From assembly GCF_006345805.1 (NCBI RefSeq), contig NC_043017.1:27714001-27778000 (forward strand): a DNA stretch of 64,000 bases. Reading direction: 5' to 3'. The stretch comes from Octopus sinensis (Eukaryota). The number at the start of each line of letters is the position of its first letter. Position 1 is the stretch's first letter. Under the pieces are notes generated by a model. It saw only the letters and a list, made by a program, of their open reading frames with translations. It made no database searches and had not been told where the DNA came from. Below are positions 582 through 60,514 of this stretch, in pieces. The translations under genes and the position numbers were made by a program.

Positions 582-728
582 TTTCTTTATTAGCCACACA
601 GGGCTGAATACAGACGGGACAGATTACAAAGTAGAGCCTTCCTTTTTTGGAAGAAAAAAAAAGTGGGTTAAGTTTTCGATCAAAAGGAATCATAACAAAA
701 AAAAAACCGATTAATAGGGATCGTGTAG
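582..728 (-). mobile_element. 5'-truncated 3'UTR fragment of a related Tx1 LINE
   Basis: Reverse complement of 582-623 (TCTGTCCCGTCTGTATTCAGCCCTGTGTGGCTAATAAAGAAA) matches the LINE tail 49333-49375 at 40/42 by hand; looser similarity (tacacgat..ccttttgatcg..ctta) continues to ~728. Confidence 0.82.
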
Positions 729-3474: not shown

Positions 3475-4555
3475 GTGCAGATATATATCTATATACGCAT
3501 ATACATATGCACGTATGCATATGTACCGATGTGTCAAATATGTTGGTGGTTGTGTGAGCTTGAACTTATAGTATCAGTATACAACTTTTCGTATGCTTCA
3601 AACAGCGTAACATAGTTATTCTTTGAGGTATACTATTTACAAAAGATCAAACACATAGGCGATCGAGAAAAACCTTTACATGAGTAGATATAAGTGAGTG
3701 TCAACCTTGCAGGCGGTACCGTACTACTTTTGGCTGGAACCTGTAGAAGTCTATGAAATAGCACGAAATATACATTAGAGAATACAAGCCTAACAGAGAT
3801 TTACCAACAGTGAAAATGTTATTATTAATCGTCGGTTACACTGGTTAATATAGATTAGTGAGTTTGGCACAATGCCGTCCATTTAGCAAGACGGAATAAA
3901 CGAGTTAATCGATGCTACTTATTTGTCTACGATGTCTTTTATAGAGCCGGGATGGCTAGAAGAGAAATTCGAAGCAACCAGTCGTAAATAATTACAGCGT
4001 AGCATTTAAATATTCTCTTAACCGAGTCTGCCAATCTGCTGGTTGCACATTGGTTAATATAAAGAGCAAGCAATTCTGTCTATAACGTTATAAGTAATAT
4101 TATTTCTGAAAAATCTGCTGCTATGAAATGTTTTCGTAGTAGGAATGTAACTAACTTGATAGGTTTATGTACGAATTTATTTCATAAAGTGCTGCAAAGC
4201 AAAGATGACTTTATAGTCAAACTGATAGTATTCAGCAGCTTTTAGTATCTATAAGTATCACATAAATATAGTCTTCCCCACAGAGAAATGAAATGCTGTA
4301 TCATGTTTTGCGTTATGGTACATGCATGTGTCATTCCAAAACATGAATATGAGTGTGAGGAAGAGATTTATTACATGACGTGCAAACAAATGGTGTTTCC
4401 CGTGGCGAATATAATTTTAATAGTTCATAAATATACGTACAGACATACATATATATACCTACATACATGTATGTGTGTTGGTGAAAGTGTATGTGTATAT
4501 ATATAATATATATGTATACTATGTGTATATATATATACATATATGAACATATATA

Positions 4556-4755
4556 TTTCTTTACTACCCACAAGGGGCTAAACATAGAGGGGACAAACAA
4601 GGACTGACAAATGGATTAAGTCTATTACATCGACCCCAGTGCGTAACTGGTACTTAATTTATCGACCCCGAAAGGATGAAAGGCAAAGTCGACCTCGGCG
4701 GAATTTGAACTCAGAACGTAACGGCAGACGAAATACCTATTTCTTTATTACCCAC
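4556..4755 (-). mobile_element. SINE family C (Tx1-type tail), 5'-truncated dimer with 15-bp TSD
   Basis: One full internal unit plus the preceding unit's tail end (TGTGGGTAATAAAGAAATA|GGTATTTCG); TSD ATATGAACATATATA at 4541-4555 and 4756-4770. Confidence 0.9.
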
Positions 4756-4912
4756 ATATGAACATATATATATATGTATTATGAGTATATATGTTATATA
4801 TAATATGATATATAAATATATATATATAATATATATTTTTATATAATATATATATATATATGCATGTACCTCTCTCTATCTATATATATATCATATATAT
4901 ATATATTTGTAC

Positions 4913-5070: not shown

Positions 5071-5957
5071 AATAGGCACGAACTTGTGCACGTGTTTTAT
5101 TTTTCTTCTCTTGCCAAGCATTCAAGGTATAGAATGGAGTAAATAGCAAATTTCTCTCTGTAAAAGAGCCGCAGTATAAACATAAATGTAATAACTTTAT
5201 GCGTGCATAACTGTGGCATCCAATGTTGTGCCAAAAGGCATTCACAGAAATGCAGCGATACGATGCCGGTATTGAGATAACTGTCTGCAAGAGGCATGCA
5301 AGGCACATCGTCTTTTGCACAAGCAATTATGTGAAGGTGCCGCAGTAGACGAGTAAAGTTTTATAAAAAGCCGCATAGATGAGATTGGATATAAGAGAAC
5401 AACACAACGAAAATAAGCTGCGAGTAGAACATCAATGAACTCTGGAACTCAGTTTTTATATACACACACACACAATTGTGATCATACACAAGCACTCACA
5501 CAGGCATATGAGCATGTCTTTATGTGCGTATGTATATACGCACATACACATACGAAAGTATATGTCTATGTGTGCATGTGTGTATTTTCATACAAAAGAG
5601 GTTTTGATTAGAGGAAATACATTGTGTCTGAAATCAACGTTAAACGCGCTTACCAAACGCAAGTAACGCAGTTTCTCTGGCGTTATGTCAGATTGTACAT
5701 CCATATATATGAAAGCAATACATACATACATCTACAAATACACACACACACATATATATACATATATATATGTATGTATATATATATATATATATACACA
5801 CACATATTATATGTATATATATATACAAATATGATATAATATATATATATATATATATACATACAAATATATATATATACATACACACACATATATATAT
5901 ATACATACACACATATATATACATATATACATATACATACATATATATATATATATA

Positions 5958-9357: not shown

Positions 9358-9737
9358 ACACATTTAGAGAGGATATACGTGTGTGTGTATTGTGTATATA
9401 TGTATGTCTCTACTATTTTATAATTATTATATATCTTCCAGTGCGGAAAGAGCTGGTCTCCAACAAAGATACAAGGCTCCATTTTGGGTCTGTATTTAAC
9501 AGACACATTCACATTTGTAACTTGAGAAAATGTTGCATATCTTCAGTGTTTCACTCACAGATTGGATTGTAATGTACGAATCAACCGGTCAATTTCCCTT
9601 TCTCAAAATCACAGGTTCTCTTCTAAGCATGTACTAACAAAACCTAATGCTCCAATTATTATTGGTATGAATATGAATCCATTGTCTGGATATAGATACT
9701 AGAGGTTTCGAAGCATTTGTCCATTTGTTTTGATATT

Positions 9738-10441: not shown

Positions 10442-11699
10442 ACAGGTATTATATATTAGAAGAAATAAAAGTACTCAGAAATCTGGATAGTTTTATATTT
10501 ACAGATATTTAATATTTCACATATTTTTATAAATCATATATTAGCGCTTGCGTCCACACTATAGTGAACGCAGGCGTTAATATATGATTGGAACTTGTAA
10601 TATGTCTACTGGCGTGGGATGACTTTATACTTTGTAACACTAATCTATAATGAATCAAATTTACTAATGTATAAGGACTCGAGTTTATTATTTAGTTATC
10701 GTTTGCAGCAATAAGCTCTTGCCTTACTGAAGTACCGCCATTATTGTTAAAGCGTATTTAGAATCTTTTGCCGGTCCTGTCTTCGGAATCGATTGTGTGA
10801 AGTAATGGACGGAATACAGTTGCACTTCTTGGCGTTTCTTGCCGTTTCACTGCATTTGCTTTGCGTCTTCAACCTTCGTCTACTAATGCCACGGGTATGA
10901 TTCGAGTTGCGCTGTTAAATATTGGGCTTTCTTGCGATTAAAACTGAGAGCAGTAATTCAAGTGACTTAGCTGGATTTTTTTCTCATAGAAGCAACATGG
11001 TTTCGCTTTACCGTGTTCTGAAGTTTCGCATTACGTAACTAACCAGACGCCACATTTATTTCCTTGTCACGCAGTAACTCACTCTCAATCATGGGCTGCA
11101 ATACGCTATATACCCTGATTACAAGCCGTCTCTTGATATATATCTCTTTGTCTGTAACTGATTGGCATTCCACTGTATTTTCTTCATCAATCCCACTTTT
11201 AATATTGTGTTCAAATATTTCTGTAATTAGAGGTATTTCCAGTTTTCTTGACAGTCTCTGGTACATTTGTGCCGGCACGTTTGCTTATAGTGGCCGACTG
11301 TATGACTAAACACATGTCTAAGGAAGCTACGCGAACAGAAGAGGGTCCAAAATATTTAACTAAGTTCCTCAGTTAACTACAGGCAGTCTCAGTATGGATG
11401 TCTATCTTCATAGTGAGAGGTCGATTATCTTTCACTGTATTGACTCCTATCTCTTGAAAAGTCATGCGGACGTTTCTCTTCTGCACAAAGGATAACAAGG
11501 TCACGCAGTTTGAGATGTATCATGCCTTGATCGAGATATATCACATCCAGATTTGTAAACACACACACACACACGCACATACACACGCACATGTACACAC
11601 ACACACACACACACACACACACCAGTCACTTCCTGCGAAGACGTTTCCAACAAGCCCCCCTACCCCGACCAAATTTCAGACGTTGTGACTCTTGTCACA

Positions 11700-12896: not shown

Positions 12897-13109
12897 AGGC
12901 AGCGCACTGGTAGAATAGTTAGCACACCGGGAGAAACGTCTAGTAGTATATCATCTGCCGCTACGTTCTGAGTTCAAATTCCGCCGAGGTAGACTTTGCC
13001 TCTCATCCTTTCGGGTTCGATAAATTAAGTACCAGTGAAACACTTGGGTCGATAGAAGGGACTTTTCCGCTTCCTTAAAAATGGCTGCCCTTGTGGTGAT
13101 ATTTGAAAC
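12897..13109 (+). mobile_element. SINE family C, alternative tail (..GGCTGCCCTTGTGGTGATATTTGAAAC)
   Basis: AGGCAGCGCACTGGTAGAA head, GAGTTCAAATTCC B box, Nin/Deu-like GCCT.TCATCCTTTCGGG.TCGATAAATTAAGTACCAG; preceded by (ATT)n. Confidence 0.85.
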
Positions 13110-13655: not shown

Positions 13656-13819
13656 TTTCTTTATTACCCACAAGGGACTAAACATAGAGGAGACAAACAA
13701 AGACAGACAAAGGGATTAAGTCGATTACATCGACCCCAGTGCGTAACTGGTACTTAATTTATCGACCCCGAAAGGATGGAGGGCAAAGTCGACCTCGGCG
13801 GAATTTGAACTCAGAACGT
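13656..13819 (-). mobile_element. SINE family C (Tx1-type tail), 5'-truncated, within (TAA)n
   Basis: tttctttattacccacaagg..gaatttgaactcagaacgt flanked by (AAT)n on both sides. Confidence 0.88.
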
Positions 13820-13829
13820 AATAATAATA

Positions 13830-14020
13830 GTTTCAAATATCACCACAAGGGCAGCCATTATATCGACCCCAGTATTTCACTGGTACTTAATTTATCGACT
13901 CCGAAAAAGATGAAAGACAAAGTCTATCTCGGCGGAATTTGAACTCAGAAACGTAGCGGCAGACGATATAACACTCGGCGTTTCACCCAGTGTGCTAACT
14001 ATTCTGCCAATGCGCTGCCT
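13830..14020 (-). mobile_element. SINE family C, alternative tail
   Basis: Tail identical to 13079-13109 in reverse orientation; head flanked by (AAT/GAT)n. Confidence 0.82.
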
Positions 14021-15030
14021 CTATAATAATGATAATAATAATAATGATAATAATAATGATAATAATAATAATAATGATAGTAATAATGATAATAATAATG
14101 ATAATAATACTGATAATGATAATAATAATAATAGGAAGAGAAGGAGGAGTTCTCGTTGATATTTAACCAAATAAGGAACTGATTATTTTGCTGGAAGCAT
14201 TCTTGTGATGTAATAGATTATTTAACTTCAACTAATTAAGAAAATATAAACCGAAACTTGGATAGAACAACTGTCGGGTTCTGATGGCAAATGATCATGT
14301 GGAGTGTGCGCGTGGGTGTGAGTGAGTGCATTTTGATTGACGAATTACATAACTTTCTCAGTCACCGTGGTTATATTCACACGCATCTTTTGTGTTCGTT
14401 GCTTGTCTGTATATGCGTCTAAGGCGTTAATATCTGGCGTGGTATAATATCTGACCACGATTTTTTATAGTCAATTAATTTATGTCTGCTTTCACGTAAA
14501 AAAGCAGTTTCAAGAACTCCATTTACAATCATCGAAATTATCTTTCGATGAACTTTTATTGATTGATTTCCATCGATTATTTCGAACTCTATAACTAATC
14601 AAAACTACAACAGCAGACAAAACAAAACAAAAAAATGAAATAAAAACAAAATCAATAAGAAAACAAATAGAATATTATTTCTAATATTGAAACAAAACGC
14701 AGTAAATGTGTACAGTAGTCGCAAACACTCCTAAAGAGAATGGCACTTTTTCATAGTTACAGCTGTTCATTTTTTTCTATTGGTTCCTCTTGTAGTTTGC
14801 GTTACTTTTGATGTTTGTTTTCAATTATTATCTTTTATTGATGTAGTTACAATGATTTTTGTACTCGCTGTCACAGAAGACGTGCATTCATTGTCAGCAC
14901 ACATCATCATATGGGTGTGGGTAATGAAGCTTCGGTGATTGATTGGCGCTATTATGAGTGATGGTCATCTGGTTGGGAATATTAATACAAAACAAAGATG
15001 AACGCCTCGATAGCTGATAGTACATTCCAA

Positions 15031-15598
15031 AGGCGGCGAGCTGGCAGAAACGTTAGCGCGTCGGATAAATGCTTAGAGGTATTTCGTCTGCCGTTACATT
15101 CCGAGTCCAAATTCCACCGAGGTCAACTTTGCCTTTCATCCTTTCGGGGTCGATTAAATAAGTACCAGTTACGCACTGGGGTCAATATAATCAACTTAAT
15201 CCGTTTGTCTGTCCTTATTCGTCCTCTCTGAGTTTAGCCCCTTGTGGGTAGTAAAGAAATAGGTATTTCGGCTGCCGTTACGTTCTGAGTTCAAATTCCG
15301 CCGAGGTCGACTTTGCATTTCATCCATTCGGAGTCGTTTAAATAAGTACCAGTTACGCACTGGGGTCGATATAATCATCTTAATACCTATGTCTGTCCTT
15401 ATTTGTCCCCTCTATGTTTAGCCCCTTGTGAGGAATAAAAAAATAGATATTTCTTCTGAGTTCGAATTCCGCCGAGATCGACTATGCCTTTCATCCTTTC
15501 AGGGTCGATAAGATAATTACCAGTTGCGTACTGTGATCGATCTAATCGACTGACAAACTCCCCAAATAATTTCGGGCCTTGTACCTAGAGTAGAAAAG
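15031..15598 (+). mobile_element. SINE family C head-to-tail trimer
   Basis: Unit 1 15031-15261 with full head; unit 2 15262-15445 and unit 3 15446-15598 start at G(G/A)TATTTC; units 1-2 have the Tx1-type tail, unit 3 ends GGCCTTGTACCTAGAGTAGAAAAG. Confidence 0.9.
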
Positions 15599-15627
15599 TA
15601 TATACACATATATGGGTCCGTGTGTCT

Positions 15628-17422: not shown

Positions 17423-17666
17423 AGTAGTGGTATCAGCAGTAGTAGTTGTAAGACTAGTAGTAGTGGTAGTAGCAGCAACAGTAACATCAGTAGTAGTAGT
17501 GGTAGTAGTAGTAGTGGTGGTGGTGGTGGTGGTGGTAGTGGTAGTGGTAGTAGTAGTAGTTGTGGTAGTGGTAGTAGTAGTTGTGGTAGTTGTGGTGGTA
17601 GTAGTAGTAGTTGTGGTAGCAGCGGTAGTGGTGTTAGTAGTAGTATTAGTGGTGGTGGTGGTGGTG
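17423..17666. repeat. (AGT/GGT)n triplet repeat
   Basis: Direct reading. Confidence 0.95.
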
Positions 17667-17667
17667 T

Positions 17668-17997
17668 TTTCAAATTTTGGAACGAGGATTCCAATTTCGG
17701 TGGGACGAGCAAATCAATATTATCAAAGGAAATATCTGAACGGGTTCTTATTTTACTGACCCCGAATGATGGAAGTCAAATTCTAATTCGGCTGCATAAG
17801 CCCGGTAGTTATGTCACTAAGCATGTTAACCGGCCTGCTAAATATGTTCTGCCCTCAGTAAGGACTCCACTGATATATTTTTTAACGAACTTGGGGGATA
17901 TAAGATGCAAAGACGACCTTGCTGGGTTTCGAACGCAGAATGTTATGTGTTGGAACCGTAGTTTATCCTGCACGCTAACGTTTCTGCCGGTTCAGTT
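17668..17997 (-). mobile_element. Two old, degenerate SINE family C-like copies
   Basis: ttattttactgaccccgaatgatg.. and ..cacgctaacgtttctgcc; adjacent to (AGT/GGT)n. Confidence 0.5.
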
Positions 17998-24476: not shown

Positions 24477-24744
24477 CTCCTTTGATGGAACAAAGTAATA
24501 CTCATCATTGAATAACAGTAATCTTCCGCCCCCATTCACATATAAATGTATGTATAAATGCATTTCAGTCCATGGCACATTCGATGTATTAAGAAACTAA
24601 TCAACACTTTACAAATTTTGTACGTCAGCCATTATAGTTTTCCAAACTACATTGATGTTTTAGCATTTTATGAATGCTCATTAAAAAAAAAGAACTATTT
24701 TTGTGACAAAAATTGGTTGATACATTGGTTCCAAATTTAGGACA

Positions 24745-24856
24745 AGCCAGTAACCTAGAGGCAGGGGTTAAGTACATTACATCGTCCCCCAGTGCTACAC
24801 TGTTACTTACATAAAACACCCTGAAAGTATGAAAGGCAAAGTCGACCTCAGCGTGA
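24745..24856 (-). mobile_element. SINE family C fragment, cut at a Helitron-like start
   Basis: ttacatcgtcccccagtgc..gaaagtatgaaaggcaaagtcgacctc. Confidence 0.6.
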
Positions 24857-37987: not shown

Positions 37988-38637
37988 ATCTTTTCTTTTA
38001 TAGGGACAGCTCTGGATTCTTGGGGAGGGGGACAGTCCATTATATCGAATCCAGTACTCAACTGCTACTCATTTTATCGGCCCTTCAAAGGTGAGAAGCA
38101 AATGTTGATCTCTCAACGTAATGGCAGACGAAATGTCGCTAACTATTTTGCCGGCAAGCTAATTCTGCCATCTCATCGCTTCGATAATAATAATAATAAT
38201 AATGCTTACGAATTTTAGCACAAGGGCAGGAATTTTGGAGTGAGAGGAGGATGAGTCGATTACATGGATACCAGTGTTCAACTACTGCTTATTTTATCGA
38301 CCCCGAAAGGATGAAAGGAAAAAAGTCGACTGCAGCAGAATTTGAACACAAACATAAAGATGGACAAAATGTCGGTAAGCATTAGTTCAGCGTGCTAACG
38401 ATTCTGCCAGCTTGGCGACTTAATAATAATAAGGATTTCAGACTTTTGGCACTAGTGCAGCATGGAGGAGGGGATTACATCGACGCCAGTGCCTAACCGG
38501 TACTTATTTAATTGACGCTGAAAGGATGAGTGTCTAAGTCGACCGTTGCAGAATTTGAACTGAGAACGTAGCGGCAGGCGAAATACCGCCGCTAAACATT
38601 CCGACCGGCGTGCTAACGATTCTGCCAGCTCGCCACC
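37988..38637 (-). mobile_element. Cluster of three same-orientation SINE family C copies separated by (TAA)n
   Basis: Copies at ~37988-38180, 38204-38420 and 38433-38637, each ending (plus strand) in ..ttctgcca.ct.g.cg. Confidence 0.78.
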
Positions 38638-42737: not shown

Positions 42738-43236
<499 letters not shown>

Positions 43237-43456
43237 CTGACTGACGGATGTGATGTCGTTTCGGCTCCGAAGGTAATCATTTATTTTGACTATTTAAAAG
43301 TGTATATTGACAACATTTTTTGCTTAAAAGTTGTACAACAACATCCACTGTAAACCTTTGATAAATATCACACAAAATTTTGCCCCTTGTGGGCAAAATT
43401 TAAAAGAAAAAATTCTCATAGCCTTCGTGGTTTCATTTAGCCATTTTATTTCCAAA

Positions 43457-45597
43457 ATGGCCACTGGCCACCACGAGGCTGAGTTGCAAGTGAAGCGTGA
43501 CGCAGAAACAGAAAAACAGGATGCCCTGTTAGCATACGCCGAACCTGACAACAACTCCACCACCACCAACAGCAACAAATACAAAACAAAGGTCGCAAGG
43601 CCAAGCACCGTCAACACCATCAGTGAGTCCACCACCACCACCAACACCATGGCAGAATCTGCTACTAAAACTGCTATCCCTACTAAAGATATCGCCACCA
43701 ATAACATCACCATCACCGTCACCAAAGACCGTGCTGTCAATGCTACTAATACTAAACACCACCGCCGTCACCAAGAACGACAATAACAACAACAACAACG
43801 ACGACGACACAACAATTCCCTTCAACCACTGCTCACTCCATCACCAACAAGTGAAAAAATAACGACGACAAGCAAACGAAATGTCGAATTTTGCCCTAGT
43901 GCAGGACTAAAGTACGCAGGCAATTTTCCACCCCTTCCTACTTGCACGATCGAACCTAACACACCAATTTTACAAACTGCAGCCAACAACAACACCACCA
44001 CAAGCAACAACAATAACAAAACAACAACAAATTTCGCTGAGGCGATTAAAGAAAAAAAAACAACAATATACTTTACGGCTCAACAATTACAGGACACGAA
44101 CATCAAAATAACAGAATCAGAAGGTATCGTAAAATTAACATACCAGAAGATATTTTGGAAAATGAAAAAAGACGAACAATCATTTATAAAATAGTTAACA
44201 AAAAAACAAAAATCCCAGAGAAGGCCAACACAGCAAAATAGAGAAGTGCTTGAAACCCATCTGGGATCACAAAGAATATGTAACCTGGTGGAACAAATTT
44301 GCCCACATACAAGTCGTTTTCTACACCGAAGAGTTAGCTAGACATTTCTCAACGCTAACTCTTCACTCAGATGAACTCCAACTTACACCAAGCTATCGGG
44401 GACAGAAAGTGACTAAGATCACTCTAAACAATGTCCCCAAAATAGCCAATAGTCTATGGCTTGTAAAGGCTTTATGCGTAAAAATGGCGAATTATACTAT
44501 TTTGGAAACCACAGTCACAGAGCATAAAAACTGGGTGGGAAAGAAAATAGAATTTCTTCTACATATACATCATGAAGATATAAAAAAAATACCCACCCAG
44601 ATATGTGTATCAGACGACCACAAGTTATATGTGGTCGTCGATGGCAGAAGACCACGTTGTTACATATGCGGCAGTGAGCAACACTCAAAAAAGACTGCAA
44701 ATCTGCCGCAAGAAAACAACAGCAACAACAACAGCAGCCGGAAACAAAAACAAATAAACAAGGTTTACTACCACACCACTTTTTGCAGGAACAAACCTCA
44801 CCAAACAAACAACCACACAACTGCAGCACCAAGAACAGAAGCAGCATCACCAACAACAACAACCAAGAATATACCAACTCCCAAACCAAGGACATCTGCC
44901 AAAAAGACACCCAGCATAAATGAAGAAACAATTACAACTCCAAATCCCCACAAAATTGACACCCTAAACAACACAACAATACCCACAATCACTCAAACAC
45001 AAAATACCCAAACCCCACATCCAAAACCGCATACACCACAACCAAACGCTCACCAACCCCACCAACAACAAAACCAACACAGTCGACAATAGACCCCAAT
45101 ACTTTCCCTCTTCCAGACTCCGATTCGTCTGATCTGTCATTAGACGAAGAAGACACGGAAGATTGGCAAATAGCCACAGGGGGGAGAAGAAAAAGGGGAA
45201 AAAAAGAAAAGAAAAAAAAACAAACAAAGCGGGAAGATACACCACTCCCGAAACAAAAACATCCACAGAAAACACACACATCAACACAAACACACCATCA
45301 TCAAACCCCCCAAAAATGTTGACAGCCATAAACACAAACAACCACGACCTAATGGAACACATTAGGTCAAACACTAACATTACTGAAAACGACATAAAAA
45401 CAAGTAACCACCCACACACAACACCACCACAACACATTAAAATAATACACGTGACACAGAACACATACAGCACCCTGAAATCTCTTTACCCTGATGCAGT
45501 AGGGAGATTTCAAAAGTACTCATCAAAAAAACTGTACAAAAGCCTCATAGAAGAAGACCGTGAGGTGAAAGACAAAGAACTTTCGAAAGACAAGTAA
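43457..45597 (+). pseudogene. LINE ORF1 (nucleic-acid-binding, CCHC zinc knuckle), frameshifted in this assembly
   Basis: ATG at 43457 (MATGHHEAELQVK..), Thr/Asn-rich N-terminus, TNFAEAIKEKK, KVTKITLNNVP (RRM-like), LYVVVDGRRPRCYICGSEQH-x-KKDC (CX2CX4HX4C across a 1-bp frameshift near 44685), acidic then basic tract DSDSSDLSLDEED..KKKGKKRK; TAA at 45595-45597. Confidence 0.78.
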
Positions 45598-45639
45598 CCT
45601 TTTCTCTCTCCTTTTCCTTTTTTGCACTTTTATCGGAAC

Positions 45640-48600
45640 ATGCTCAGAATAGGTAGTATAAATGTACGTGGCTTGGGGTCGCCTTGGAAACAAGGCTACC
45701 TGTTAAATGACATCAAGTCACTAAATCTGAATATCATAGCCATCAGTGAGACCAGACTCCACAGCTTGCGGGCACTCCAGCACATTTTCGGTACACATTT
45801 CAACATTTATTTTTCTCCGTGTCTACCGAGAATGGGCGGAGGTGGCACCGCGGTGCTTATCCGGAAGAGTCTGGATCTCAAAGTAAGAGCAAATTTCCTA
45901 GACCCGAGGGTAGGCTGGTCGTTTTGGATGTCGATGGCAGCAATGAGTGTGCTTTTCGACTGATAGCAGTTTATGCTCCGTCCTTAACAGGCCGACCAGA
46001 TTTCTTTCGACGTCTAGAGTCTTTCATGGGAACGTCTCGTCCTTTACTTTTAGTGGGGGATTGGAATGCCACCCTGGACACGCATCTAGACTACGTGGGC
46101 AGAGATAGCAATAGAAGGGGATGCAAATGCCTCAAAGACCTGCTCAGACGTTTCCAACTGTCTGACAGGTACCGACTGGACCACCCGAATGTGCCAATGT
46201 GGACATGGAGTAACCGCATCGGGTCGTCCAGATCATACTTAGATAGAGTATTCTGTAGGACAATAGATAAAAATAGTGTAGGTTGTCCACAATTTCATAT
46301 AGTCAGTTACACAGATCACAAGTTTGTGACTTGTACACTTGACTTAGATAAGACACATAGGCAGGGTCCTGGTTACTGGAAACTGAACGCGTCTTTTACA
46401 GCACGACAGGTTTACAGGGACCGGATCAGCACATTAGTTAAGAGAGCTTTAACGGGTACCATCATCAACAACAGATGGTGGTATGCCCTAAAAAAAGCGA
46501 TTAAAGCAGAATCAGTCAGATACAGTAGAGCCCTAGCATTAGACCGAAATAGAGTAGAGGGAGAATTAGTTAAGGTTTTAGAAGAGGCACTTAGAACTGG
46601 CATCGCGTCCAACGTACTGGCGGCGAGATTGGCCCTCGACCAACACCTCAACGCCAAACACGAGGGATGCGTTGTCAGAGCTAGGATGCGTGCTCTGAGG
46701 AACGAAGGAGTTGGAGCCGCCCAAGAGGCCCGAGTGGTGGAGACGCAACGAGGCAACAGAGCCACCATCAAGTCTCTTATAGATGAACAGGGGCGCGAAT
46801 TGCTCGAGCCTAAAAGGATGTGTGGGGTTTTTCAACAACACTTCACCCAACTGTTTGGGACAAGTGGTGAGTCAGAAAGCAGAGTGGACTTTAGTGCCTA
46901 CCTGCATGCCTTGCCACGACTCTCAGCAAGGGAGGTGGAGTCTTGTGAAAAGCCTATCACAGCTGCGGACGTACAGGATGCGATGGTAGGCTGCGCGAGA
47001 GACAAGTCACCAGGCTTGGATGGTCTGCCCTACGAATTTTATTTTCATATGCCAGACTTGTTTGGAGGCGTCTTGGCAGCTGTCTACTGCAACTGGCAGC
47101 AGAACGGGAGTATTCCTGCTTTTGTAAAGCGAGGAGCAGTGGCACTGATCAAGAAAGACCCAAACAAGGGGGACGTCATAGATAATTTCAGGCCCATCAC
47201 TCTGCTCAACGCAGATTTGAAAATTTTGGCCAAGGTGTTAGCCGAGAGGTTGGCGCTTGTCATCAAGAAACTAATCGACAAGGCGCAAACATGCGCCGTG
47301 CCGGGTAGAAGTATTCATGACAACCTCCATCTGATGCGCTACATCATAGACAGGGTAGTTAAAAATCCTGGCATGGGTGGGGCGCTGATCAATTTGGATC
47401 AATCAAAAGCCTTCGATAGGGTAGACCATCACTACTTGGAGGCTGTCCTCAAAGCGGCTGGTTTCGGTCCAGTTTTCCGCGGTTGGATCGCTGCCTTATA
47501 CAGCGGCATCCGCTCAGTAGTTCGCGTAAATGGTCATCTATCCAGACCTTTTAACATCATGCGTTCGGTTCGTCAGGGATGCCCCCTCTCATCGCTGCTG
47601 TATGTACTGACTCTTGAGCCACTACTGCGGAAACTGGCGACGCTGAGGGGCATCCCACGAGAGCTGGGATGCGGGAGGAGCGTGTCTGCATACGCGGATG
47701 ACGTCACCGTCATAGTGTCGAGCTACGAGCACATCGAGCTGGTCGGCGAGACACTGAAAGAATACGAAGCGGTAACGGGAGCAAAAATTAACCGGGAAAA
47801 GTCAGTGGGCTTGCGGCTCGGCACCTGGAGAAGCAAGCCCATGCCGTCCAACAGCGTCTCCATCGTGGGACGCTGGACGGACGGACCGGTTAAATTGCTC
47901 GGGGTCTGGTTCGGTCCGGACCTCCAAATGGAGAAGAACTGGGGCGAGATAACGACTAGGGTGGCTACTCTCACCCAGAAATGGACTGAGAGAAAGCTAT
48001 CCCTAAAAGGTCGGGCGGAGGTGGCGAACGCGTACATCGCATCCGTCATCGAGTATCGTCTGACCGTCGTGCCTTGTCCCGACCCTACCATCACCAAACT
48101 GGAACGCATACTCTTCCGCTTCTTGTGGAAGGAAACGTTCCGATGGTTAGGCGATCCATTTGCTGCCAACACCCGCTAAATGGAGGGCTGGGCATGCCGT
48201 GGTTGATGATGCGCAGACATGCGCTGAGACTGCGACATCTCCGGCGCTTCATAGACAACGGTGAACAGGGGTGGTCGCCTTTTGTGCGGCGCGCTTTCCC
48301 GCAGCTCGTCTCCTTGGACGAACTACAGTCATGGATCAAGCAGAGACCGAGGCTAGGCGAATGGCACCGTGAGTGTCGCGTTGCTCTCAAGCAACTCTGC
48401 CGTCCGGGATCGAACTTGTGCGACTCCATCACAACAAAGGCATTCTATAGAGGATTAGTGGAGGGGAGGTGCGACGACGAACTCGGGCAGAGTCTGGGCG
48501 TCGACGAGGAACACCTGACCCGCCTGTTCAGGACAACTTTCGGGCCGGGACCTATGAACAATCACCAAAGATCCCTGGCCTGGCAGTGCTATCGAGAAGC

Positions 48601-49075
48601 ATTACCTGTTCGGGATAAGCTCTACAGACACGGTTCCAGACACACTGGACCGACTTGCCCGAGATGCGGTCAGAGCGACGAAACCGTTCTGCACGCACTC
48701 GTGCAATGTCCAACCATTTCCGACCTGTGGGCTTATGCCGAACGGCTGCTGTCACGTGTGGGACGAATCCGCCTATCGGCCGAGTCTATCGTGAGAATTG
48801 CTCCGCCCCCTTCCCTCAACCGGGAAGGCAAGGCAGTTTTCATCGTACTGGTGGCCATGGTGAAAGAATGTGTGTGGTGGACTCGAGCGAAAGGATTAGA
48901 GACAAACACTTACCTCTCTGGCCAATCGCTCATCAACTTTTTCAAGTACCACTTGAAAAGGAAGGTGAGAATGGAGAGGGAAGTTTTGTCTCGCGAAAGA
49001 TTCAAAAAAAGATGGGTGAATGTTGCAAAGATGGTGCGTGCTAGTAACGAAACCATTTTGAGCATGATCCTGTAG
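45640..49075 (+). CDS. LINE ORF2: APE endonuclease + reverse transcriptase + zinc-finger domain; two 1-bp frameshifts (~45906, ~48132)
   Basis: EN motifs GSINVRGL, IAISET, IAVYAP, VGDWNA, SYLDRVF; RT motifs FRPITLLNADLKILAK, NLDQSKAFDRV, SVRQGCPLS, SAYADDVTV; FRFLWK/GGLGMP; CPRCGQSDETVLHALVQC. Pieces 45622-45963, 45819-48179 and 48074-49075 join with single-base shifts and no in-frame stops. Confidence 0.92.
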
Positions 49076-49376
49076 ATCGTAAAAAAGAAAAAAAGAGAGC
49101 ATTTTTGACCTCATGTGTTTATTTCCTCCCTGACTGGGGTTCCCGTGGTCTTTTCTGTAGGCTTTTCTTCCCACGGATGAACCCAATCTTGTTATATCAA
49201 TGTTTACACCATTATTTCTGTGATACACGATTTTCTTTTTCCTTTTTTTTTCCTCCTCTCGATCCCTTTTGATCGCAATCTTACATTTTTTTATTTTTTT
49301 CCACCCTCGAAAAGAAAAGCTCTGCATTTGTATTTGTCCCCTCTGTATTCAGCCCTGTGTGGCTAATAAAAGAAAG

Positions 49377-50437
<1,061 letters not shown>

Positions 50438-59335: not shown

Positions 59336-59884
59336 ACTTCACACACATGCACATACACCCACACCCACATGCACTCACATACACACACACATACACACAC
59401 ACACACACACGCACATACCACACACATACAAATATATGCATAGTTATATATGTGTGTGTCCGTGTACGTGTCAATCTGTATATTTTAGTCGTGTTTTTCC
59501 AACACTTTCTCTTGAAAACCGGTGTTCGTTTGGTCATTTCACCTTAGCTTGGCGAATTTTGCAAAATCATCAACAGAATAAAAAAGGGCTTCAAAAAATA
59601 CATACTAGGGTGGATTTCTCCTACTAAACAAATCAAGGCAGTCTCCCAGCGGAGCTGTATCCAATGACTAATGTAAATAAAACGCATATATTTATATAAT
59701 ACACACACTCACAAGTACACACGCACTTACCTCTCCTCCACAAAAATACACACACACACACGCACACACCACACCATATATATATATATATATAATATAA
59801 TATATAATATATATATATGTGTGTGTTGTATTTCTATGTAAGTCACTAACATATATATAATATAAAGGAACATTTTGTCGTACC

Positions 59885-60116
59885 TATTTCTTTACTACAC
59901 ACAAGGGGCTAAACACAGAGGAGGCAAACACGGACAGACAGACGGATTAGGTCGATTATATCGACCCCAATGCGTAACTGGTACTTAATGTATCGACCCC
60001 GAAAGGATGAAAGGCAAAGTCGACCTCGGCGGACTTTGAACTCAGAACGTAACGGCAGACGAAATACTGCTAAGTATTTCGCCCAGCGGGTAACATTTCT
60101 GCCAGCTCGCCGCCTT
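59885..60116 (-). mobile_element. SINE family C (Tx1-type tail), full monomer with 15-bp TSD
   Basis: Full head AGGCGGCGAGCTGGCAGAAA; TSD ACATTTTGTC(G/A)TACC at 59870-59884 and 60117-60131. Confidence 0.92.
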
Positions 60117-60514
60117 ACATTTTGTCATACCATATCAACTTTGAATATACAACCTTATAAATATTACGTAACGCAATGGTTTCCTACAAATTGCAACCGA
60201 TTAGAATATTAATTATGTTTTGATGGAAGCATACCAAATAATACTGTATTATGGGTAATGATTGTTAATATTAAACTATAAACGTTCTCAGTCATGTTAA
60301 TTGATGTACCAATATTATATCTTATAATTCGAAATGCAATTATAAAAATATCAAATATCGTAATTTATTTCATATTACGAACAATACACTAAACCTTTGA
60401 AACTACAAAACAGCATATATATAAACGTGTGGGTGTGTGTAAGTTCATGTGTGGGTATGGATATGTGGGCAAATGTGTATATGTATGTATATGTATACTG
60501 TATTTATTTCTGGA

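What the first reader, a model, noticed from the sequence alone, without database searches (positions are those of the whole stretch)
49333..49376. SINE family C shares its 3' tail with the Tx1 LINE: candidate SINE-LINE partnership
Seen: the LINE ends TTTGTCCCCTCTGTATTCAGCCCTGTGTGGCTAATAAAAGAAA. SINE C copies end TTTGTCCCCTCTATGTTTAGCCCCTTGTGGGTA(A/G)TAAAGAAA (4556-4597, 13656-13697, ~15220-15260, ~15403-15443, ~59887-59928), 35/42 identical by hand for the 4556 copy, and both stop at AAAGAAA without poly(A). Two copies have 15-bp TSDs. Established: shared 3' tails mark stringent SINE-LINE pairs, mainly for L2/CR1/RTE, whereas animal L1-superfamily partners usually act through poly(A). Inference: this Nin/Deu-like tRNA SINE is mobilised by the Tx1 family. 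I do not recall this pairing being described in cephalopods.
Basis: partly seen in the sequence, partly recalled or inferred. Interest (0 to 1): 0.8.

Follow-up and report, generated by a model that had tools for sequence, protein, structure and literature searches.

The report
Octopod SINE shares LINE 3' tail
A short parasitic repeat (SINE) in this octopod genome ends in the same roughly 43-base tail as a nearby L1-like LINE, and a second octopod genus shows the same pairing, so this LINE family is the likely engine that copies the SINE.

Summary
The LINE (43237-49375, +) ends in TTTGTCCCCTCTGTATTCAGCCCTGTGTGGCTAATAAAAGAAA. Five SINE C units end in a tail that is 35/43 identical to it. The match is end-anchored, 8.9 sd above shuffles, and blastn finds it independently (E 1.7e-5).

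Three further results support it:
- Seven LINE 3' ends were compared: two in the window, four from Argonauta hians, one octopod-like contig. Their last 25 aligned columns are 81% identical; further upstream they are 27-44% identical.
- Argonauta SINEs with a different head carry the tail of an Argonauta LINE subfamily (28-30 of 32-33 positions).
- None of the 16 element ends has poly(A). SINE copies have 13-15 bp target-site duplications (TSDs) and 5' truncations.

The best reading is a sequence-specific ("stringent") SINE-LINE partnership.

The LINE has APE, RT and zf-RVT domains, and human L1 ORF2p is its best solved relative, so it belongs to the L1 superfamily. I could not test the Tx1 label against reference sequences; it rests on literature context and on hints of a target preference for (TCTA)n, (ATT)n and TCTAT. 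A 4-bp stem-loop in the tail is only weakly supported.

I found no description of this pairing in the papers I could search. Repbase, Dfam and SINEBase were not available. The principle is well known; the unusual parts are the LINE clade and the host.

The parts
43237..49375 (+). Full-length but defective L1-superfamily (Tx1-like) LINE, about 6.1 kb
   Evidence: Bounded on both sides by (TCTA)n arrays. Carries Exo_endo_phos, RVT_1 and zf-RVT domains. Human L1 ORF2p is the best PDB hit, E 2e-52 across APE and RT. It is the only RT-coding element in the window.
49333..49375 (+). LINE 3' tail shared with SINE C (the finding)
   Evidence: 35/43 identical to the SINE C tail, z = 8.9. It ends in AATAAAAGAAA with no poly(A).
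49076..49332 (+). Rest of the LINE 3' UTR, not shared with the SINE and poorly conserved between LINE copies
   Evidence: 27-44% mean pairwise identity upstream, against 81% in the last 25 columns.
44250..45092 (+). ORF1 remnant with a degenerate CCHC knuckle (CYICGSEQH...)
   Evidence: tblastn with the ORF1 of relatives L003 and L005 hits 44238-44714. Those ORF1s carry zf-CCHC.
45622..49075 (+). ORF2 (APE, RT, zf-RVT) split into three frames by two frameshifts, located between 45765-45894 and 48128-48137
42738..43236 (.). (TCTA)127 microsatellite flanking the LINE 5' end
49378..50437 (.). (TATC)270 microsatellite flanking the LINE 3' end. It is the same repeat as on the 5' side, so the LINE sits inside one array.
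582..691 (-). Second LINE 3' end, either a 5'-truncated or a diverged copy, ending ...TGTATTCAGCCCTGTGTGGCTAATAAAGAAA
   Evidence: 80% identical to 49261-49375 overall. The last 31 nt are identical apart from one A.
4556..4755 (-). SINE C, a 5'-truncated dimer. Its 5' end keeps 16 nt of the upstream unit's tail (4740-4755). The 15-bp TSDs are at 4541-4555 and 4756-4770.
13656..13818 (-). SINE C, 5'-truncated, inserted in (ATT)n just 3' of another SINE family's tail
15030..15259 (+). SINE C full-length unit (head, core, tail); first unit of a head-to-tail array
15260..15443 (+). SINE C second unit, starting at TAGGTATTTCG, with a degenerate tail (...GAGGAATAAAAAAA)
59887..60116 (-). SINE C full-length copy. 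TSD GGTAYGACAAAATGT at 59870-59884 and 60117-60131.

Best explanation
SINE C is a non-autonomous retroposon that borrows the enzymes of this L1-superfamily (probably Tx1-clade) LINE family by carrying a copy of the LINE's 3' terminal tail.

Shown:
- Both elements end in the same roughly 43-nt sequence. It consists of an upstream GTCCCCTCT block, a short G+C stem with a 5-6 nt loop, and then TA(A/G)TAAAGAAA.
- The last 25 or so nt are the only conserved part of the LINE 3' UTR across subfamilies and genera.
- Insertions of both elements end exactly at GAAA with no poly(A).
- SINE insertions have 13-15 bp TSDs and 5' truncations.

Inferred:
- The LINE ORF2 protein recognises this tail on its own mRNA.
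- After the APE endonuclease nicks the target, the protein starts target-primed reverse transcription at the terminal GAAA, not on a poly(A) tract.
- SINE C RNA, made from the Pol III promoter-like boxes in its head, presents the same tail and is copied in trans.
- The LINE copy in the window has a broken ORF2. The active source would be another copy or a closely related subfamily.
For: 1. Tail identity is 35/43, end-anchored, z = 8.9. blastn finds it independently at E 1.7e-5. The terminal motif occurs only at these element ends: 7 hits against 0.18 expected.

2. Across seven LINE 3' ends (window 49375 and 582; Argonauta L002a, L002b, L006, L009; L011), the last 25 aligned columns are 81% identical against 27-44% upstream. 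The matching ORF2 proteins are only 55-76% identical.

3. A second pairing exists in another genus. Argonauta hians SINEs with a different head (L002:9621-, 11058+, 11308+; L009:5857+) match the tail of Argonauta LINE subfamily L002b at 28-30 of 32-33 positions. The window's SINE C matches the L009 subfamily tail as well as it matches the window LINE, 35/43.

4. The match is specific. Eight other SINE copies in the window share the head and core but have other tails, which are 43-64% identical to the LINE tail against 76-82% for SINE C.

5. There is no poly(A) on any of the 7 LINE ends or 9 SINE ends.

6. TPRT hallmarks are present: TSDs of 13-15 bp and 5'-truncated copies.

7. LINE tails keep the AATAAA hexamer in 6 of 7 cases. 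SINE tails mostly read AGTAAA, AATAGA or AACAGA. This fits a Pol II transcript for the LINE and a Pol III transcript for the SINE.

8. The junction context is shared. Six of eight Argonauta LINE and SINE ends are followed by TCTAT, whose background frequency is 0.0017 per position.
Against: - Sampling is small: 2 LINE ends and 5 SINE ends in the window, and about a dozen from other loci. No genome-wide consensus, copy counts or age profiles were made.
- The window LINE differs from SINE C at 8 of 43 aligned tail positions and its ORF2 is frameshifted, so it is not itself the driver.
- The stem-loop is only 4 bp with one compensatory pair. RNAalifold predicts no consensus structure and single-sequence z-scores range from -2.6 to +0.1.
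- Other LINE clades reported as active in octopus (RTE, CR1, Dong-R4; PMC13282606) were not sampled, so a better-matching tail elsewhere is not excluded.
- No functional data exist.
Confidence: 0.72

Rival explanations
1. The shared tail is a historical relic. SINE C, or its ancestor, once acquired the LINE's 3' end, but current or most amplification was driven by a different LINE (for example RTE, CR1 or Dong-R4), or without sequence-specific tail recognition.
For: Octopus genomes have several recently active LINE clades (PMC13282606). SINE heads, bodies and tails are known to be swapped (PMC5804259). Many SINE copies here abut (ATT)n. From my own knowledge, TAA repeats are the classical target of Dong-type elements.
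Against: SINE tails remain close to LINE tails in two genera, each resembling a particular LINE subfamily. LINE copies of this family are themselves followed by (ATT)n, (TCTA)n or TCTAT. The SINE tail is kept to the last base, including the GAAA terminus, in copies that are 89-95% identical to one another.
Confidence: 0.12
2. The true partner is an unsampled LINE, of the same superfamily or another clade, whose tail matches SINE C better than the copy in the window. The window LINE would then be only a cousin of the driver.
For: There are eight differences in 43 aligned positions between SINE C and the window LINE. An Argonauta subfamily (L009) shares the TCTATGTTT...CCCTTGTGG version that the window LINE lacks. 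Thirteen recently active L1-Tx1 families are reported in O. vulgaris.
Against: If the better match is another subfamily of the same LINE lineage, this refines the main explanation and does not replace it. No other RT-coding element is present in the window to test.
Confidence: 0.12
3. The similarity arises by chance or from composition, between two A/T-rich ends with a shared polyadenylation-like hexamer.
For: The last 10 nt (AATAAAGAAA) are low in complexity.
Against: The match covers 43 nt, including the G+C-rich GTCCCCTCT and GCCC..GTGG blocks. z = 8.9 and blastn E = 1.7e-5. The pairing is replicated in Argonauta.
Confidence: 0.01

Closest known systems
Stringent-type SINE/LINE pairs with a common 3' tail, such as UnaSINE1/UnaL2 and MIR/L2. 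Reviewed by Ohshima & Okada 2005; PMC3747384 tabulates 58 pairs.
   Same: The SINE and LINE share the extreme 3' end. The tail is conserved among LINE copies. It contains a short stem-loop followed by a fixed terminal motif. There is no variable poly(A). TSDs and 5' truncation are present.
   Different: The partner here is an L1-superfamily LINE, not one of the CR1 or RTE clades that dominate the table. The host is a cephalopod and does not appear in that table. The stem is only 4 bp and is poorly supported. No terminal tandem repeat such as (TGTAA)n is part of the element.
Stringent L1-clade pairs in green plants: LINE1-1_ZM with ZmSINE2/3, and L1-1_CR with SINEX-3_CR (Ohshima 2012, PMC3472496)
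   Same: An L1-clade LINE has a conserved 3' end, with a hairpin, that is shared with tRNA-type SINEs. This argues that L1-type enzymes can be sequence-specific.
   Different: Those pairs are in plants and algae. The plant elements end in (T)n and the algal pair ends in poly(A). The octopod elements end in a fixed AAAGAAA. This would be an animal example.
Tx1-Mar LINEs and SINEU in crocodilians (Kojima 2015, PMC4494074)
   Same: A Tx1-clade LINE is proposed to trans-mobilise a SINE, and the two share a target preference.
   Different: That pairing rests on a shared target (Mariner-N4_AMi) and on snRNA-derived 5' ends shared by some Tx1 families and SINEU. All SINEU have poly(A) tails. The octopod pairing rests on a shared specific 3' tail with no poly(A).
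Microsatellite-targeting Tx1 families: Kibi in (TC)n, Koshi in (TTC)n, crocodilian Tx1 in (TTCC)n and (TTTC)n (cited in PMC4494074)
   Same: The window LINE sits inside (TCTA)n. One relative is followed by (TCTA)4 and another by (ATT)n. Argonauta insertions favour TCTAT.
   Different: Here it is a preference at most. Several LINE and SINE copies are not in microsatellites.
Mammalian L1 with Alu and B1 (relaxed, poly(A)-dependent mobilisation)
   Same: ORF2p has the same domain organisation (APE, RT, C-terminal Cys/His domain). Human ORF2p is the best solved homologue.
   Different: There are no poly(A) tails, and the 3' terminus is fixed and conserved on both LINE and SINE.

Membership tests
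Stringent SINE-LINE partnership (shared 3' tail) | Sequence similarity confined to the extreme 3' ends of SINE and LINE, above chance | tested here: met
   35/43 identical, end-anchored, z = 8.9. blastn E 1.7e-5. No other part of the SINE matches the LINE.
Stringent SINE-LINE partnership (shared 3' tail) | Tail conserved among LINE copies and subfamilies more than the rest of the 3' UTR | tested here: met
   81% against 27-44% mean pairwise identity over seven LINE ends.
Stringent SINE-LINE partnership (shared 3' tail) | Defined 3' terminus with no variable poly(A) | tested here: met
   All 16 ends stop at (A/G)A(A)AGAAA or a degenerate form of it. None has poly(A).
Stringent SINE-LINE partnership (shared 3' tail) | Conserved stem-loop in the tail supported by compensatory changes | tested here: inconclusive
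   A 4-bp stem is paired in 82% of cells, and one pair switches G-C to C-G. RNAalifold predicts no structure and fold z-scores range from -2.6 to +0.1.
Stringent SINE-LINE partnership (shared 3' tail) | Tail-dependent trans-mobilisation by the LINE protein | not testable with these tools
   Requires a retrotransposition assay.
L1 superfamily of non-LTR retrotransposons | ORF2 with an N-terminal APE endonuclease, an RT, and a C-terminal Cys/His (zf-RVT) domain; closest to L1 ORF2p | tested here: met
   Pfam finds Exo_endo_phos, RVT_1 and zf-RVT. Human L1 ORF2p scores E 2e-52 over residues 43-772, against R2 proteins at about 1e-20. The intact relative P0003 aligns over its residues 5-852.
Tx1 clade | RT phylogeny groups the element with Tx1 reference elements and not with L1 proper | tested here: inconclusive
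   No Tx1 reference could be obtained. A profile search returned no Tx1-named protein and no supplement was held. Indirect evidence: a frog L1 (P0059) scores 346 bits to human ORF2p, while the window LINE scores 182 and P0003 scores 256. The octopod LINE therefore lies outside vertebrate L1. Mollusc and octopus L1-superfamily LINEs are annotated as Tx1 or L1-Tx1 in the literature.
Tx1 clade | Target-sequence preference, which is common in the clade but not universal | tested here: inconclusive
   The LINE lies inside (TCTA)n. L006 is followed by (TCTA)4 and L011 by (ATT)n. TCTAT follows 6 of 8 Argonauta ends. Other copies are in unique sequence.
tRNA-derived SINE with a Nin/Deu core | 5' head recognisable as a tRNA | tested here: not met
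   ARAGORN finds no tRNA in the window. Rfam finds nothing at E <= 1 in 14980-15620. By eye only, the head has a B-box-like GAGTTCAAATTCC and a partial A box.
tRNA-derived SINE with a Nin/Deu core | Central domain homologous to the Nin/Deu consensus | not tested
   No reference domain sequence was available. The core ...TCGGGGTCGATAAATTAAGTACCAGTT... resembles Deu/Nin from memory only. Octopus SINEs are reported as mostly tRNA-Core and tRNA-Deu.
Relaxed L1-type (poly(A)-primed) mobilisation | Variable-length poly(A) at the 3' end of the LINE and its SINE | tested here: not met
   No poly(A) on any of the 16 ends.

The most novel reading that the evidence does not exclude
An animal L1-superfamily (Tx1-like) LINE lineage recognises a specific 3' tail and not poly(A). 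Through that tail it drives at least part of the octopod-specific SINE expansion, with a bias for AT-rich microsatellites and TCTAT sites. That would be an animal counterpart of the stringent plant L1s. It would also name a partner LINE for some of the most abundant repeats in octopus genomes.
Probability: 0.5. Interest if true: 0.65.

Novelty: new member of a known kind. Interest (0 to 1): 0.5.

Why it matters
SINEs are the largest or second-largest repeat class in Octopus genomes: 11.6% of the O. vulgaris assembly (PMC13282606) and about 40% of its transposable-element content (PMC8967140). Their expansion is a recurring theme in cephalopod genomics. None of the papers I could search names the LINE that moves them.

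A tail-sharing partner gives a concrete, testable driver. If the partner is an L1/Tx1-type element that does not use poly(A), it bears on a standing question: was sequence-specific ("stringent") template recognition ancestral in the L1 group and later relaxed, as proposed from plant data (PMC3472496)?

The principle of SINE-LINE tail sharing has been established since the 1990s. This is therefore an informative new case, not a new mechanism.

Tried and rejected
- **Tx1 classification.** A third homology search with a 12-sequence profile returned no protein named Tx1. The Kojima 2015 supplement with Tx1 consensuses is not held. PDB contains only L1 and R2-type LINE proteins. The L1-EN loop-swap chimeras 'LTX' and 'LR1' score about the same as wild-type L1-EN against P0003, so they do not discriminate.
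- **tRNA origin of the SINE head.** ARAGORN and Rfam at E <= 1 found nothing.
- **Consensus RNA structure of the tail.** RNAalifold predicted no pairs.
- **More distant LINE relatives.** L003-L005, at about 44% ORF2 identity and from metagenome-labelled contigs, do not carry the tail motif. The tail is therefore specific to the octopod lineage and those loci add nothing.
- **Loci without a usable 3' end.** L001, L007 and L010 stop before the 3' end. L008 has a variant ending that I could not interpret. P0075 could not be located. The octopus genome paper PMC4795812 is not held.
- **(TATC)270 as an RT-generated 3' repeat of the LINE.** I think this less likely than insertion into an existing array, because the same repeat also flanks the 5' end, and the Argonauta TSDs include the TCTAT.
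- **Other LINEs in the window that could own the tail.** None of the nine other non-repeat ORFs of 180 aa or more that I scanned has a Pfam hit, and tblastn finds no second RT.

Full report
**1. The observation**

The sequence quoted for the LINE end is at 49333-49375. Base 49376 is a G after the final AAAGAAA, and a (TATC)270 array starts at 49378.

blastn of one SINE C copy against the window recovers five tail-bearing units: 4556-4740, 13656-13821, 15077-15259, 15259-15443 and 59887-60067. It also recovers the LINE tail (49333-49375, 81%, E 1.7e-5) and a second LINE-type end at 582-621 on the minus strand.

The SINE C consensus tail aligns to the LINE tail with 35 matches in 43 columns. Both sequences are anchored at their last base. 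The score lies 8.9 sd above 20000 shuffles, none of which comes close. The terminal 16-mer GTGGSTARTAAAGAAA (up to 2 mismatches) occurs seven times in the window, only at these ends, against 0.18 expected.

Two copies have clean 15-bp target-site duplications. Two are 5'-truncated. None has poly(A).

**2. What the LINE is**

The element runs from about 43237 to 49375. It lies exactly between (TCTA)127 and (TATC)270, which is the same microsatellite on both sides.

- ORF2 carries Exo_endo_phos, RVT_1 and zf-RVT domains. Two frameshifts split it into three frames, between 45765-45894 and between 48128-48137.
- An ORF1 remnant (44250-45092) aligns to the ORF1 of relatives that have a CCHC zinc knuckle.
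- The best solved homologue is human L1 ORF2p, at E 2e-52 across endonuclease and RT. R2 proteins score about 1e-20.
- An intact relative at 44% identity (P0003) aligns to L1 ORF2p over its residues 5-852.
- A frog L1 (P0059) scores 346 bits to human ORF2p, but only 160 bits to the window LINE.

The element is therefore L1-superfamily but lies outside vertebrate L1.

I could not obtain any Tx1 reference, so the Tx1 label is an inference. It rests on two points. L1-superfamily LINEs of molluscs and octopus are classed as Tx1 or L1-Tx1 in the literature (PMC10294476, PMC13282606, PMC8967140). Microsatellite targets are a known habit of Tx1 families (PMC4494074).

**3. Is the tail a property of the LINE family?**

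A second LINE 3' end in the window (582-691, minus strand) is 80% identical to the first over 119 nt. Its last 31 nt are identical apart from one A.

Protein searches found relatives in Argonauta hians (55-69% identical in ORF2) and in octopod-like contigs from metagenome assemblies. Their 3' ends were read in the following calls:

| Locus | 3' end |
|---|---|
| L002:8282 | ...CAGCCAGGTGGCTAAGAAAGAAA |
| L002:8648 | ...GTCGGCCCTTGTGGCTAATAAAGAAA |
| L006:7787 | ...GCGCCCATGTGGCTAATAAAGAAA |
| L009:5189 | ...CGTCCCCTCTATGTTTTTGCCCTTGTGGCTAATAAAAGAAA |
| L011:2017 | ...GGGCCCTTGTGGCCAATAAAAGAAA |

Across these seven ends, the last 25 aligned columns are 81% identical on average. The columns further upstream are 27-44% identical. 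The tail is therefore the constrained part of the 3' UTR in a LINE lineage that predates the Octopus-Argonauta split. A stray SINE fragment next to one LINE copy cannot explain this.

**4. A second pairing in a second genus**

The Argonauta loci also contain SINEs with a related core and a different head: L002:9621-9830(-), about 10830-11058(+), about 11073-11308(+), and L009 about 5640-5857(+). They end ...TTCTGTGTTYGGCCCTTGTGGCTAAYAGAGAAA. This matches the Argonauta LINE subfamily L002b at 28-30 of 32-33 positions.

The window's SINE C instead resembles the subfamily tail seen in L009 and in the window LINE, at 35/43 each. Each SINE thus resembles the tail of a particular LINE subfamily.

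Within the window, eight other SINE copies share the head and core but have other tails. Those tails are only 43-64% identical to the LINE tail, against 76-82% for SINE C. The match is specific to family C.

**5. How it most likely works**

Shown:
- a shared, conserved, fixed-length 3' terminus;
- no poly(A) on 16 of 16 ends;
- TSDs of 13-15 bp;
- 5' truncation;
- head-to-tail SINE arrays.

Inferred: ORF2p recognises the tail and starts target-primed reverse transcription at the terminal GAAA, and the SINE RNA presents the same tail and is copied in trans.

Two details fit this reading. First, the LINE tails keep an AATAAA hexamer in 6 of 7 cases, while the SINE tails have mostly lost it (AGTAAA, AATAGA, AACAGA). 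That is expected if the LINE is a Pol II transcript and the SINE a Pol III transcript. A Pol II transcript would be cleaved and polyadenylated downstream of AATAAA, so the absence of poly(A) in genomic copies implies that reverse transcription starts internally, at the tail. Second, in Argonauta six of eight LINE and SINE ends are followed by TCTAT, whose background frequency is 0.0017 per position. Two TSDs include it: CTATTTCAAGGAA and TCTATAGRYCAGCAC. LINE and SINE therefore share a junction or target signature.

A 4-bp G+C stem with a 5-6 nt loop can be drawn in every tail, and one pair switches between G-C and C-G. RNAalifold predicts nothing, and the single-sequence folds are not clearly better than shuffles. 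I treat the hairpin as unproven.

**6. Rivals**

- *The tail is a relic and another LINE does the work.* I give this about 0.12.
- *A closer LINE subfamily, or a LINE of another clade, is the true partner.* I give this about 0.12. If it is another subfamily of the same lineage, it only refines the main explanation.
- *Chance.* Excluded.

The direction of transfer cannot be read from these data. The LINE tail could have been captured by the SINE, or the reverse. The breadth of the tail among LINE subfamilies favours the LINE as the source.

**7. Comparison with what is known**

Tail sharing between SINEs and LINEs is textbook. The 58 pairs compiled by Ohshima are mostly CR1 or RTE. The only L1-clade pairs in that table are in maize and sorghum and in Chlamydomonas. 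No octopus SINE and no animal L1 or Tx1 pair appears there (PMC3747384, PMC3472496).

The one proposed Tx1-SINE pairing, Tx1-Mar with SINEU, rests on a shared target and on poly(A) tails (PMC4494074). Mollusc SINE papers and octopus repeat papers do not name a partner LINE for octopus SINEs.

Repbase, Dfam and SINEBase could not be queried. "Not described" therefore means only "not found in the searchable literature".

**8. Verdict**

This is a real, well-supported SINE-LINE tail partnership. It is a new member of a known kind, and the unusual part is the partner clade, an L1-superfamily and probably Tx1 element.

- Confidence in the partnership: about 0.7.
- Confidence in the Tx1 label: about 0.6.
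- Interest: 0.5.

The main limits are the small sample, the lack of a clade phylogeny, and the lack of any functional test.

Noticed in passing
window 42738-43236 and 49378-50437; L006:7788-7808; L011:2018-2105; L009:5190-5206: The LINE sits inside a single (TCTA)n microsatellite of about 400 units. An Argonauta relative is followed by (TCTA)4. Another relative is followed by a long (ATT)n, and a third by TAATTATTATT. This suggests a preference for AT-rich microsatellites, as in some Tx1 families.
   Followed up: partly
L002:8649, 9616-9620(-), 11059, 11309; L006:7788; L009:5858: In Argonauta hians, six of eight LINE and SINE 3' ends are followed immediately by TCTAT (background 0.0017 per position). 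In two cases the TCTAT is inside the TSD. One SINE inserted exactly at the 3' junction of another.
   Followed up: partly
window 15030-15598 and 4740-4755: SINE C occurs as a head-to-tail dimer whose second unit starts at TAGGTATTTCG, followed by a third unit of another family. Copy 4556-4755 is a 5'-truncated dimer that keeps 16 nt of the upstream unit's tail. This is either a dimeric subfamily or template switching between SINE RNAs.
   Followed up: partly
window 12946-13109, 13830-13970, 15444-15598, 17666-17792, 24727-24853, 37990-38112, 38204-38370, 38436-38587: At least eight further SINE copies share the head and core of SINE C but carry other 3' tails, which are 43-64% identical to the LINE tail. 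Several still contain GCCCTTGTG and end in ...TTTGAAA(C). They may pair with other LINE subfamilies. Three of them form a tandem cluster at 37990-38587, separated by (ATT)n.
   Followed up: partly
window 582-691 (-): A second LINE 3' end of the same family, with no coding sequence upstream. It is either 5'-truncated or belongs to a diverged subfamily. No TSD could be identified.
   Followed up: partly
tails listed: LINE tails keep an AATAAA polyadenylation-type hexamer in 6 of 7 cases. SINE tails mostly have it mutated (AGTAAA, AATAGA, AACAGA). This is consistent with different RNA polymerases transcribing the two elements.
   Followed up: no
P0075; loci L007, L008, L010, L011: A protein 60% identical to the LINE C-terminus is labelled in NCBI as coming from a Herbaspirillum metagenome-assembled genome. 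Several 'metagenome' contigs also carry this octopod-type LINE. Host DNA has probably been binned or assembled into microbial data sets.
   Followed up: no
window 43458-44240: The LINE 5' region contains long low-complexity stretches rich in A and C (CAA and ACC repeats, encoding T/N/P-rich peptides) upstream of the recognisable ORF1 segment. I did not determine whether they are coding or 5' UTR.
   Followed up: no
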